A stretch of DNA of 64,000 bases from Octopus sinensis (lineage: Eukaryota): the NCBI RefSeq assembly GCF_006345805.1, contig NC_043001.1, positions 66,960,001 to 67,024,000 of the forward strand, written 5' to 3'. Within the stretch, counting starts at the first letter, position 1; the number at the start of each line of letters is the position of its first letter. The translations under genes were made by a program, and so were the position numbers. Shown here piece after piece: positions 33,401 through 36,400 of the stretch. The notes under the pieces were generated by a model, which worked only from the letters and a program-made list of their open reading frames with translations, was not told where the DNA came from and searched no databases.

Positions 33401-36400
33401 CATAGATATATTTCAATATTTATGACAATTCAATGAAAACAGTTCTTTTCTAAAATAATATCAATATTATGCATATTTGTTATAATTATTGTTACCTATT
33501 AATTTTATAATCAAATTAAAAGCTTTTCAGCTTATATTGTCCATTAAAATCTCCCAGTTAACATTAGGATTTAATACAAAATATTAAAATTGATTTTTTT
33601 TTTTTTGAAAGATGAACCAATCTCTTTAAACAATTCCACTGATAGAAAACCCATTAAAAATCTGTTCTGAATTTATCTGTTAAAACCTCATATATTGGTT
33701 TTTGCTTTACTGTGTTAACTGAAGTCTTACCTCAACCATTGTTGACATGAAAAATTCAACTTTTGTATTACCCATTCTTTGTTTAAGTTCTTTCTCAAAC
33801 AACTGTCAATGGTATTTTGATTAATTTGTATTTGATGTCCATATTATAAACCCTCCTTATTTCATTACTCTTCCAAATTTTCTTTGTCCAAAATCTAATA
33901 TTCTTTCACTCATTACAGCCAAAATTACTCCCTTCCAGTTTATTTGCATGGTTGTGTTTTACAGAGCTTTCTAGATCTAATATCCTCAATTAATCAGAAA
34001 ACCTCATCCCAATGTATTTATAAACACATGAAACAGGGAGACTTGGATAAGAGAGAAAACAAAAATCATAATTTAACAAGTCACCTAAAACGTTTGAATT
34101 TTTTTTTTTTTTTTTATTAATCTATTATATTATTATCAAAAATAAAAGGTTTTCCTCTAAATTACAATTGATTTCCCACATCTCATACCTCTGCAAAACA
34201 CTTTTGAAAGAGCCCACATTGAATAATTCATAGTATTAAACTCCACTTTCACTTTACCAACTGTTTTGGGGATTTCATTTTGAGTACTTAGGTTAAATGA
34301 TTAAGTTTCTTATCTATTGTTACATTATTCTAACAAGCAATCAATTTCTTGTTTATTGATATCATGTTTGTATCTTGTATAGAATAAGGAGCATGGAACA
34401 GATCATATATAGTTCCATTTATAAACTTGTGGCTCTTTAATATTAACCAGTGAATATCCTTGTTCCATAGTGATAAAAGATTCCTAATTCTACTGGTAAT
34501 ACATTCCCAATTTTCTGATTGATTTGACCTCTCAAACTAAAGAATTTAATTGTTATGTTGGATCTAAAAGAAAACAGGAAATATAGGGGACTAGGTCTTA
34601 ATCTAGTTGTAATTATTATCTTGGGGATTTGGCTTTCTACATATAATTTGGCAGTTATTTAGTAATTTTAGGCTTTAGTTGAAGTCAGCAAAACATTATT
34701 AAGTATTTAGTGTGGCTATAATCACTAGAAATTTTATTAACTATTCATGTTCCCTGGGAAAAAAAAATAATAATTAGTTTTTAAATACATTTCCGTATTT
34801 TACCAGAACATGTACAATGTTACATCATTCAGTAAATAATGACTTTTGACTGTCAACAAGCAAACCTCTGTAATACTAAGCCAAAATCTTTTTCAAATTA
34901 CGCATTACAGCCTTTTAGAAAAGGACACATTGACTATATAGTCCAACATATACAGGATCTTTGAAAAAATGACATGATCAGGGTTTACCTGTAGTTAAAC
35001 AATAAATTTTGATATAACTGAATTAATGAGGCTATGTCTGTAAATTCTTATTATGTTTCTCCATATATATCCCTCCTGTTATACTGGTTTTACTTATCTG
35101 AATTTCCCTTCTGAATTAATTTTGTGCACACACACTTTCACCCATCCAAGTATCTTTTAATTACACTTCTATGTATGCATGTTTATATACACATCTAACA
35201 CCTACATACCTAACACATACACACCATTCTCTGTTGCTAACTCAAGGACACATAACAAAACCATGTTTTTGTTTTATCTGCCAATATGAACTATTTGAGA
35301 AATCTTTTCTTGCTAAGAACCAAGATTATCCTGTAATCTCCACACTCCTCTTTACATATCATGGGAAACATGGAAACCTGAGAATTTACTGCAATCCTTC
35401 GGGGATTATTCAATTGATTATCTGATAGTTTTACTTGTCTGACTTCATGAAGAACAAATCACATTTTCATGTGATTATTTAGAAATGGACTTGCAAAAGT
35501 AATTTCTCGTGAAAAAAAGAAAATATATATATATTTTTGTGTGTATAAATATCCATAAATAGTCCCATTCTCTATCTACAAAGATGGACTGATAAATGTT
35601 GACACATTGGAGTTAACATGGCTACAGATCCACTTAACATGGCAGGACGTAACGGAATTGTAGTCCCATCAACTAGTACTAGACAAGCAATTGCTAAAAG
35701 CTTTCAGCTGGAATATTGTTGGTTCTGTGGCCGACCTATGGACTTCTTTAGGTGAGTATTTTCACCAAAAGCAAATACAAAAAGAATTGTTTTTATTTGA
35801 TTAAATTTTTCTAGTTTCATATTCAATACTTTCAAGAATATGATGTCAGTATTGATGTTGAATACCTTGAGTTATATATATATATATATTGATAAATTAA
35901 AGTGCTGGTAAAATACTGGGGTTTATCCTCCACTGATCCTCCACTGATCCTCCACCTTCTCTCATTGCCTTGTGCTAATGTTTGTTATAAAATGTTTGCA
36001 ATGTTGATTATGCTGATGTGGGAAATATGTTCTTTAACTGGTTACAGTCATTAGATGGTGACCAGGCTGAAGCAGTGCCTTCAAGGGTATAAGTTGATGA
36101 TTATCAACTCTGTCCTTGATGGAGGGCACAAAGCAAAGTCCATCTTTTGTAAGGTAGGTGAGAATACAAATCAGTTCTTATTTTGAGTTACTTCTGAGAC
36201 AGATCAGCAACCACAACTCTTAAGTTCCATGTTTTTGCATGGTTTCTGGATGCCATTCCTTTCACCAACTCTTTCATAACATGGTTAGCATGAGGAATGG
36301 TACTAAGAGTATTTTATTCTGGCACCAACACCAAAGAAGTTGTCATGTCTGCAGCAGGACTAAAGAATCTTCTCCACCCTACATTGTCTCTTTTCATTTA

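What the first reader, a model, noticed from the sequence alone, without database searches (positions are those of the whole stretch)
35584..35751. Hidden 168-nt frame-preserving exon with one in-frame UGA: internal start for a CxxC mini-LL5, poison exon, or recoded exon
Seen: possible acceptor at 35583 and strong donor at 35752; 168 nt = 56 codons, phase 2-2, matching exons B and C. Spliced after exon B it reads [56 protein letters not shown], with a single UGA followed by C at 35600. An M-D-stop uORF starts at the first base. Hypotheses (inference): (1) an alternative first coding exon giving a ~271-aa protein with a novel [10 protein letters not shown]-terminus (metal-binding half-site or S-acylation), coiled coil and PIP3-type PH domain, lacking the upstream LL5 scaffold; (2) a poison exon truncating the long form before the PH domain; (3) UGA read-through or A-to-I editing (UGA->UGG) inserting 56 aa; (4) intron retention giving a 45-aa micropeptide. 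The 168-nt symmetry alone has about a one-in-three chance. Hypothesis 1 is the most parsimonious.
Basis: partly seen in the sequence, partly recalled or inferred. Interest (0 to 1): 0.78.

Follow-up and report, generated by a model that had tools for sequence, protein, structure and literature searches.

The report
Annotated first exon of short LL5
The "hidden exon" is real, but it is the first coding exon (ATG 35618 to donor 35751) of a 271-residue short form of the octopus LL5/PHLDB protein that is already in UniProt; the cassette, poison-exon and stop-codon-recoding readings find no support in the cross-species comparisons.

Summary
The sequence facts are all correct: aaag|ATGG at 35583/35584, AG|GTGAGT at 35751/35752, 168 nt, TGA-C at 35600-35603, and phase 2 at both ends.

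The functional unit is shorter than 168 nt. It runs from ATG 35618 to the donor at 35751.
- Splicing 35618-35751 + 48239-48335 + 55575-55721 + 60234-60671 gives 271 aa. This is 100% identical to UniRef100_A0A0L8HQ64, "PH domain-containing protein", Octopus bimaculoides.
- In a second, unnamed assembly whose PH exon is 93% identical, the same exon lies 26.8 kb upstream of the PH exon (24.6 kb here). Similarity starts at the ATG and stops at the donor.
- Differences by codon position are 9/4/24.
- Nothing upstream aligns, including the TGA and the putative acceptor.
- Homologous first exons precede the "SLSS...EKL" exon in three further unnamed assemblies.
- In three named gastropods the exon is expanded to 560-1000 codons, and annotated models splice it to that same exon.

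Two sequence islands are conserved: G-[KR]-N-G and IAxSFxL[DE]xCWFCGRPM. No Pfam, PDB or literature match was found for them.

Verdict: hypothesis 1 is right and already annotated. Hypotheses 2-4 are unsupported. The 168-nt symmetry is chance: 20 comparable AG...GTRAGT pairs occur in the same intron.

The parts
35618..35751 (+). Coding part of the first exon of the short LL5/PHLDB isoform: 44 codons plus 2 nt, [44 protein letters not shown], phase-2 end
   Evidence: Identical to residues 1-44 of A0A0L8HQ64. 77% aa and 76% nt identical to L001 10001-10135, with differences 9/4/24 by codon position. Homologues in L003, L006, L007, L008 and in gastropod proteins.
35752..35757 (+). Splice donor GTGAGT
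   Evidence: Read. A GT[AG]AG donor in the same phase is present in all six loci. Alignment with L001 ends here.
35584..35617 (+). Non-conserved stretch upstream of the start codon: 5'UTR or intron, boundary unknown. Holds ATG-GAC-TGA (35584-35592), ATG...TAA (35596-35616) and the in-frame TGA (35600-35602).
   Evidence: Ungapped identity to L001 is 27-33%, which is random level. No blastn hit upstream of 35639.
48239..48335 (+). Shared exon C (97 nt): completes the Ser codon, then [32 protein letters not shown]
   Evidence: Homologues lie directly downstream of the new exon in L003 (6363-6461), L007 (12711-12809) and Biomphalaria L009 (about 25.2 kb).
55575..55721 (+). Shared coiled-coil exon (147 nt)
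   Evidence: 72.5% nt identical to L002 938-1097.
60234..60671 (+). Shared last exon: linker, PH domain and stop codon
   Evidence: Pfam PF00169 at 1.4e-17. 93% aa identical to P0002.
8078..8267 (+). Exon B of the long LL5 form, which joins exon C when the first exon at 35618 is not used. The 5' end is inferred from the AG at 8076-8077.
   Evidence: L004 has the B homologue 460 nt upstream of C. The transcript-like ORFs P0166 and P0167 read ...SEKET|SLSSGEDQ....

Best explanation
35618-35751 is the protein-coding part of an alternative first exon. It lies inside the 40-kb intron between exons B and C of the octopus LL5/PHLDB gene.

A transcript that starts upstream of 35618 (start site not located) is translated from ATG 35618. 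It is spliced 35751->48239, 48335->55575 and 55721->60234. The product is a 271-aa protein made of a 44-residue N-terminal module, a coiled coil of about 80 residues, and the C-terminal LL5-type PH domain. It lacks all of the long form's upstream scaffold.

The long form skips this exon and splices B (8267) directly to C (48239).

Shown here: the coding frame, purifying selection on it, the donor, the conserved position and order of the exons, and identity to an annotated protein.

Inferred:
- An internal promoter drives the short form.
- The short form acts as a membrane-targeted coiled-coil dimer. It would either compete with the long scaffold or act independently of it.
- The invariant CWFCGRPM (a CxxCG knuckle about 10 residues ahead of the coiled coil) acts either as a two-Cys half-site completed by the partner chain (Zn bridge) or as a dual S-acylation site.
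For: (1) The spliced CDS of 816 nt translates to 271 aa identical to P0152 = UniRef100_A0A0L8HQ64, Octopus bimaculoides.

(2) Orthologous locus on ENA contig ctg123308l: P0001 is 77% aa identical. It lies on the same strand, 26.8 kb upstream of the PH exon P0002, against 24.6 kb in the window. It is the only non-repeat block shared between 20 kb of that locus and the window.

(3) The alignment begins at the ATG and ends at the donor. Differences by codon position are 9/4/24. dN is 0.14, and dS is too high for the NG86 method to estimate.

(4) All six loci end on an AG|GT[AG]AG donor in phase 2. Five of them have an in-frame stop 5-12 codons before the ATG.

(5) In L003, L007 and Biomphalaria L009 the order is new exon, exon C, coiled-coil exon, PH exon.

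(6) Annotated gastropod proteins read ...[22 protein letters not shown]|SLSGGEEHLEKL..., which is the same junction. These are GFO46565.1 (Plakobranchus), GFS08687.1 (Elysia) and KAK6963507.1 (Biomphalaria).

(7) It is the only ATG-ORF of at least 40 codons ending in phase 2 on a GTRAGT donor in the intron.

(8) The long form joins B to C without it: P0166 and P0167, and L004 with its 460-nt B-C intron.
Against: - No transcript reads were available. The 35751->48239 junction rests on gene models and on phase and order conservation.
- The transcription start was not located. TATA-like strings are uninformative here, with 1148 matches in the window.
- The exact-sequence look-up of the 271-aa product in the contig collection found nothing, so its annotated neighbours could not be inspected.
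- In Biomphalaria no exon-B homologue lies within 10 kb upstream or in the first intron. There the unit might be a stand-alone gene.
- The function of the N-terminal module is pure inference. Pfam, PDB and a literature string search all gave nothing.
Confidence: 0.9

Rival explanations
1. Poison cassette exon. The long-form transcript splices 8267->35584 and 35751->48239. It meets TGA at 35600 and is truncated or degraded by NMD.
For: An AG at 35582-35583 with a modest pyrimidine run, and a length of 168 nt. Phases are compatible. This use could coexist with first-exon use.
Against: The acceptor and the 34 nt behind it are not conserved in L001 or any other locus. The intron holds 20 equally good AG...GTRAGT units with at most one stop, against about 15 in shuffles. 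A at -3 is weaker than the gene's other acceptors. Transcript-like ORFs from a relative join B directly to C.
Confidence: 0.06
2. Recoded in-frame insert. UGA 35600 is read through or edited A-to-I to UGG, adding 56 aa to the long form.
For: Cephalopods edit mRNA heavily (general knowledge). UGA followed by C is a leaky context (general knowledge). The 168 nt preserve the frame.
Against: Codons upstream of the Met show no conservation, with 27-33% identity, which is random level. Five of the six loci have their own stop at a different place 5-12 codons upstream. This explanation also needs the unsupported acceptor.
Confidence: 0.02
3. Stand-alone 45-aa micropeptide (MATDP...DFFR) from an unspliced transcript.
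For: The ORF exists. A 45-aa ORF is also callable in L001.
Against: The stop is created by the donor consensus (AGG TGA, AGG TAA) in phase 2, so its recurrence is automatic. The conserved donor, the conserved downstream exon order and the annotated spliced products all argue for splicing.
Confidence: 0.02

Closest known systems
UniProt A0A0L8HQ64, 'PH domain-containing protein', Octopus bimaculoides (271 aa)
   Same: 100% identical to the product of 35618-35751 + 48239-48335 + 55575-55721 + 60234-60671.
   Different: Nothing differs. It is the same gene model. It is an unreviewed, unnamed entry with no functional annotation beyond the PH domain.
Gastropod gene models GFO46565.1 (Plakobranchus ocellatus, 1085 aa), GFS08687.1 (Elysia marginata, 1098 aa) and KAK6963507.1 / A0A2C9JRA0 (Biomphalaria glabrata, 805 aa)
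   Same: They start with M..P....GKNG. Their first exon ends with [21 protein letters not shown] and is spliced to SLSGGEEHLEKL..., followed by the coiled coil and the PH domain.
   Different: The first exon is a single ORF of 560-1000 codons. A Ser-rich, low-complexity insert separates the two conserved islands. One of these models is misnamed 'serine-rich adhesin for platelets'. In Biomphalaria the PH exon is split in two.
Vertebrate LL5alpha/beta (PHLDB1, PHLDB2) and PHLDB3
   Same: They share the C-terminal PH domain preceded by a coiled coil. The top named hits of the PH exon are PHLDB1/2. The family is described as coiled coils plus a C-terminal PH domain that binds phosphoinositides, with FHA only in PHLDB1 (PMC7278972).
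   Different: The profile search of 1.84 billion representatives returned no named vertebrate protein; its named hits were all gastropod, and most hits were unnamed. The fish short models P0053 and P0058 lack the motif. The octopus short form lacks the whole upstream scaffold. A weak vertebrate counterpart below E=0.001 cannot be excluded.
Rad50 zinc hook and CPxCG zinc knuckles (recalled from memory; a lead, not a test)
   Same: A CxxCG[RK] motif with only two cysteines sits next to a dimerising coiled coil. Two chains could share one Zn.
   Different: The Rad50 hook sits at the apex of an antiparallel coiled coil, while this motif sits at the N-terminal end. No sequence or structure match was found. 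Metal binding is untested.

Membership tests
LL5 / PHLDB family | C-terminal PH domain of the LL5 type | tested here: met
   PF00169 at 1.4e-17 on residues 167-261. The best named hits are PHLDB1/PHLDB2 of arthropods and vertebrates at 60-73% identity.
LL5 / PHLDB family | Coiled-coil segment directly upstream of the PH domain, homologous across the family | tested here: met
   Exon C and the coiled-coil exon have homologues in all fetched loci. They align with the fish PHLDB models P0053 and P0058.
LL5 / PHLDB family | Long N-terminal scaffold (FHA in PHLDB1; partner-binding regions) | tested here: not met
   The 271-aa product has no domain other than PH. This absence is what defines the short isoform, and the long form uses exon B instead. 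FHA is specific to PHLDB1 (PMC7278972).
LL5 / PHLDB family | PtdIns(3,4,5)P3 binding by the PH domain | not testable with these tools
   Needs a lipid-binding assay.
Alternative first coding exon (alternative promoter isoform) | Own start codon with an in-frame stop upstream, and coding conservation that begins at that ATG | tested here: met
   The stop lies 5-12 codons upstream in five of six loci (72 codons in L008).
Alternative first coding exon (alternative promoter isoform) | Donor in a phase compatible with a downstream exon shared with the long form | tested here: met
   Gastropod models show the same junction.
Alternative first coding exon (alternative promoter isoform) | Transcription start site or promoter in the upstream intron | not testable with these tools
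   No CAGE, RACE or RNA-seq data were available. TATA-like strings are uninformative, with 1148 in the window.
Poison / cassette exon | Conserved, functional acceptor at the 5' end | tested here: not met
   There is no alignable sequence or equivalent AG at the homologous position. The cassette property is at chance level.
Stop-codon recoding (read-through or A-to-I editing) | Protein-coding conservation across and upstream of the stop | tested here: not met
   Identity upstream of the ATG is 27-33%. The upstream stops differ in position and type between lineages.
Zinc hook / zinc knuckle | Invariant CxxC | tested here: met
   C34, W35, F36, C37, G38, R39, P40 and M41 are invariant in 9 of 9 sequences.
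Zinc hook / zinc knuckle | Four metal ligands and measured Zn binding | not testable with these tools
   The exon has only two Cys. The partner ligands are unknown. No PDB relative was found.

The most novel reading that the evidence does not exclude
The 44-residue module (G-[KR]-N-G ... IAxSFxL[DE]xCWFCGRPM) is an undescribed N-terminal domain, conserved in at least cephalopods and gastropods, that defines a separate short LL5 isoform. Its invariant CxxCG, placed just ahead of the coiled coil, would work as an inter-chain zinc clasp or as a dual palmitoylation anchor. Either would give the PH domain a second, lipid-independent hold on the membrane or on a partner.
Probability: 0.3. Interest if true: 0.4.

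Novelty: already known. Interest (0 to 1): 0.2.

Why it matters
For the scan, the case resolves cleanly. The product is already a database entry, and the more exotic readings (poison exon, UGA recoding or editing in a cephalopod) fall away.

The remaining biological point is modest. Molluscs make a short LL5 form whose N-terminus carries an invariant CWFCGRPM motif. That motif has no Pfam family, no solved relative and no mention in the searched literature. Gastropods have inflated the same exon tenfold with Ser-rich sequence while keeping both conserved ends. This gives LL5 and cortical-platform biologists a defined motif to test.

Tried and rejected
- Pfam on the 45-aa peptide: no family at E<=10.
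- PDB profile search: only chance-level CxxC hits, best E=0.024.
- Full-text search for 'CWFCGRP': 0 papers.
- Word-indexed profile search: only 6 short ORFs, and it missed the gastropod proteins. It is therefore not evidence of absence elsewhere. A first attempt failed because the query was under 40 aa.
- Possible origin of the new exon by duplication of the start of the PH exon ([13 protein letters not shown] against [14 protein letters not shown]): hhalign probability 2.5%, P=0.018. Not significant, rejected.
- TATA box at 35544-35551 as promoter evidence: rejected. The pattern has 1148 matches in the window, mostly TA microsatellite.
- Exact look-up of the 271-aa product in the contig collection: not on record.
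- L004 and L005, two other PHLDB loci: no CWFCG-type exon within 10 kb upstream of the PH exon. L004's B-C intron is only 460 nt.
- Structure prediction: not run. MAFFT misplaced the short exon fragments onto the PH region. The only rows allowed as input would leave the N-terminus without alignment depth, so a monomer model could not address the zinc or dimer question.
- An apparent "exon C - exon B - exon C" order in L003 was an artefact. Three loci shared one FASTA file, and the order disappeared once subject ids were printed.

Full report
**Observation**

The window reads ...ctctatctacaaag|ATGGACTGATAAATGTTGACACATTGGAGTTAACATGGCT... and ...GACTTCTTTAG|GTGAGTAT. An AG therefore ends at 35583 and a GTGAGT donor starts at 35752. 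The stretch between them is 168 nt.

- ATG-GAC-TGA at 35584.
- In the frame set by exon B, WTDKC-TGA(35600-35602, followed by C)[49 protein letters not shown].

Exon B ends at 8267 with two bases of a codon, and exon C starts at 48239 with the third.

**Is the 168-nt unit more than chance?**

No. On the + strand of the 40-kb intron between exon B and exon C there are 21 GTRAGT donors and 297 AG...GTRAGT pairs of 50-300 nt. Of the pairs, 97 are divisible by three, 20 have at most one stop in the exon-B frame, and 7 have none. Block-shuffled sequence gives about 15 with at most one stop.

The same intron holds exactly one ATG-initiated ORF of at least 40 codons that ends in phase 2 on such a donor. 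That ORF is 35618-35751 (shuffles average 0.26).

**What it is**

A search with the peptide joined to exon C found one protein, P0001, a 45-aa ORF that is 77% identical. It lies on a 780-kb ENA contig. The PH-domain exon of the same contig (P0002, 93% identical to the window's) lies 26.8 kb downstream on the same strand. In the window the distance is 24.6 kb. The coiled-coil exon lies between them in both species.

Comparisons between the window and the fetched loci show:
- Across 20 kb of that locus and the whole window, the only non-repeat nucleotide or protein match is this block.
- The pairwise alignment becomes clean exactly at the ATG and stops at AG|GT[AG]AG.
- Upstream identity is 27-33%.
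- Within the ORF, differences fall 9/4/24 on codon positions 1/2/3. dN is 0.14, and dS is too high for the NG86 method to estimate.

This is purifying selection on this frame, from this Met to this donor.

**Identity with an annotated protein**

The 90% cluster of P0002 contains P0152 = UniRef100_A0A0L8HQ64, "PH domain-containing protein", Octopus bimaculoides, 271 aa. Splicing 35618-35751, 48239-48335, 55575-55721 and 60234-60671 gives 816 nt. All internal boundaries are AG and GT. The translation is identical to P0152. The window is therefore O. bimaculoides or an indistinguishable relative, and the exon is the first coding exon of an existing gene model.

**Wider conservation**

An exhaustive profile search of 1.84 billion representatives returned two kinds of hit.
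- Short genomic ORFs: P0122, P0126 and P0133.
- Long annotated gastropod proteins: Plakobranchus GFO46565.1, Elysia GFS08687.1 and Biomphalaria KAK6963507.1 / A0A2C9JRA0.

The gastropod proteins begin MNP[RK]VSP...GKNG[IVL]. After 500-1000 residues of Ser-rich sequence they read ...[26 protein letters not shown]|SLSGGEEHLEKLAELE..., which is exon C, followed by the coiled coil and the PH domain.

In Biomphalaria the first 590 codons are one exon, followed by a 13-kb intron.

Three further unnamed assemblies (L003, L006, L007) carry MDLAKLQ.LKGKNG[IV][37 protein letters not shown]. In L003 and L007, exon C lies 0.8-2.5 kb downstream, followed by the coiled-coil and PH exons; the 10 kb fetched downstream in L006 held none of these exons.

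All six genomic loci end on a phase-2 AG|GT[AG]AG donor. Five of them have an in-frame stop 5-12 codons upstream of the ATG; the sixth (L008) has it 72 codons upstream, within an in-frame repeat.

Two islands are conserved in every sequence:
- G/K-[KR]-N-G-[IVFY] near the N-terminus.
- I-A-x-[SG]-[FY]-x-L-[DE]-x-C-W-F-C-G-R-P-M at the exon's end.

**Long form**

Transcript-like ORFs from a relative (P0166 and P0167, on contigs of 1.3-1.5 kb) read ...SLESEDSS...SEKET|SLSSGEDQ.... This is exon B joined directly to exon C. In L004, B and C are 460 nt apart with nothing like the new exon between them. The two N-termini therefore share exon C, the coiled-coil exon and the PH exon. That is the pattern of an alternative first exon.

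**How it most likely works**

Shown here: a short isoform of 271 aa, made of a 44-residue conserved module, a coiled coil and an LL5-type PH domain. PF00169 is the only Pfam domain.

Inferred:
- It is driven by an internal promoter in the B-C intron.
- It lacks the long form's scaffold. The family is described as coiled coils plus a C-terminal phosphoinositide-binding PH domain, with FHA only in PHLDB1 (PMC7278972).
- It should still dimerise and reach PIP3-rich membrane. There it would act on its own or as a competitor of the long form.

The CWFCGRPM motif has the form of a CxxCG knuckle with only two cysteines, about 10 residues ahead of the coiled coil. The two most plausible chemistries are a Zn site completed by the partner chain and dual S-acylation. 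Neither was tested. Pfam, PDB and a literature string search gave nothing.

**Rivals**

- A poison cassette (8267->35584) cannot be excluded without reads. It has no conserved acceptor, and the property is at chance level.
- Recoding of UGA 35600 is contradicted by the lack of any coding signal upstream of the Met, and by lineage-specific stops.
- The 45-aa "micropeptide" stop is an automatic by-product of a phase-2 GT[AG]A donor.

**Verdict**

The 5' boundary at 35584 and the cassette, recoding and poison readings are unsupported. The remaining interest lies in the uncharacterised motif, conserved in at least cephalopods and gastropods.

Noticed in passing
L006 10107-10811; L007 10107-10606: There is an 82-nt tandem array (8.6 and 6.0 copies, 92-95% matches). 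Each copy is made of the last ~77 nt of the CWFCGRPM exon plus its GGTAAG donor, and each keeps a donor-like CAGTAG|GTAAGA. 82 is not a multiple of 3, so only the first copy is in frame with the ATG. The close relative L003 has a single copy. Degenerate repeats of the 5' leader also lie upstream in L006 and L007.
   Followed up: partly
L009 10001-11770 (Biomphalaria glabrata CM074215.1); proteins P0123-P0134: In heterobranch gastropods the homologous first exon is a single ORF of 560-1000 codons. A Ser-rich, low-complexity insert separates the two conserved islands. One such model is named 'serine-rich adhesin for platelets', evidently a composition-driven misnomer.
   Followed up: partly
Proteins P0040, P0051, P0096, P0104 (spider, stick insect, millipede): Arthropod PHLDB models of about 200 aa share a different conserved N-terminus (MF[GA]D[PH]..L[FY]LK.Q...) directly ahead of the PH exon. 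This may be an independent short-isoform first exon in arthropods.
   Followed up: no
window 35687-35725 versus 60282-60323: There is a weak resemblance between the new exon ([13 protein letters not shown]) and the start of the PH exon ([14 protein letters not shown]). hhalign gives P=0.018 and probability 2.5%, which is not significant.
   Followed up: yes
window 8951-9619 (-), 16569-17159 (+), 17257-17703 (-), 19841-20701 (+): ORFs that look like transposable-element remnants sit inside the B-C intron: reverse-transcriptase-like, helicase-like and mariner-type transposase-like. They were judged by eye from the ORF translations only.
   Followed up: no
L008 9929-10147 and 12763-15510: The homologous exon in this unnamed assembly is preceded by an in-frame repeat (VRSRETS/G x7). 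About 2.5 kb downstream lies a long array of short tandem ORFs. No exon C, coiled-coil exon or PH exon was found within 10 kb downstream.
   Followed up: no
L004 6572-7306: This PHLDB locus has exons B and C only 460 nt apart and no CWFCG-type exon within 10 kb upstream of the PH exon. The short-form first exon is therefore absent or placed elsewhere in that lineage.
   Followed up: partly
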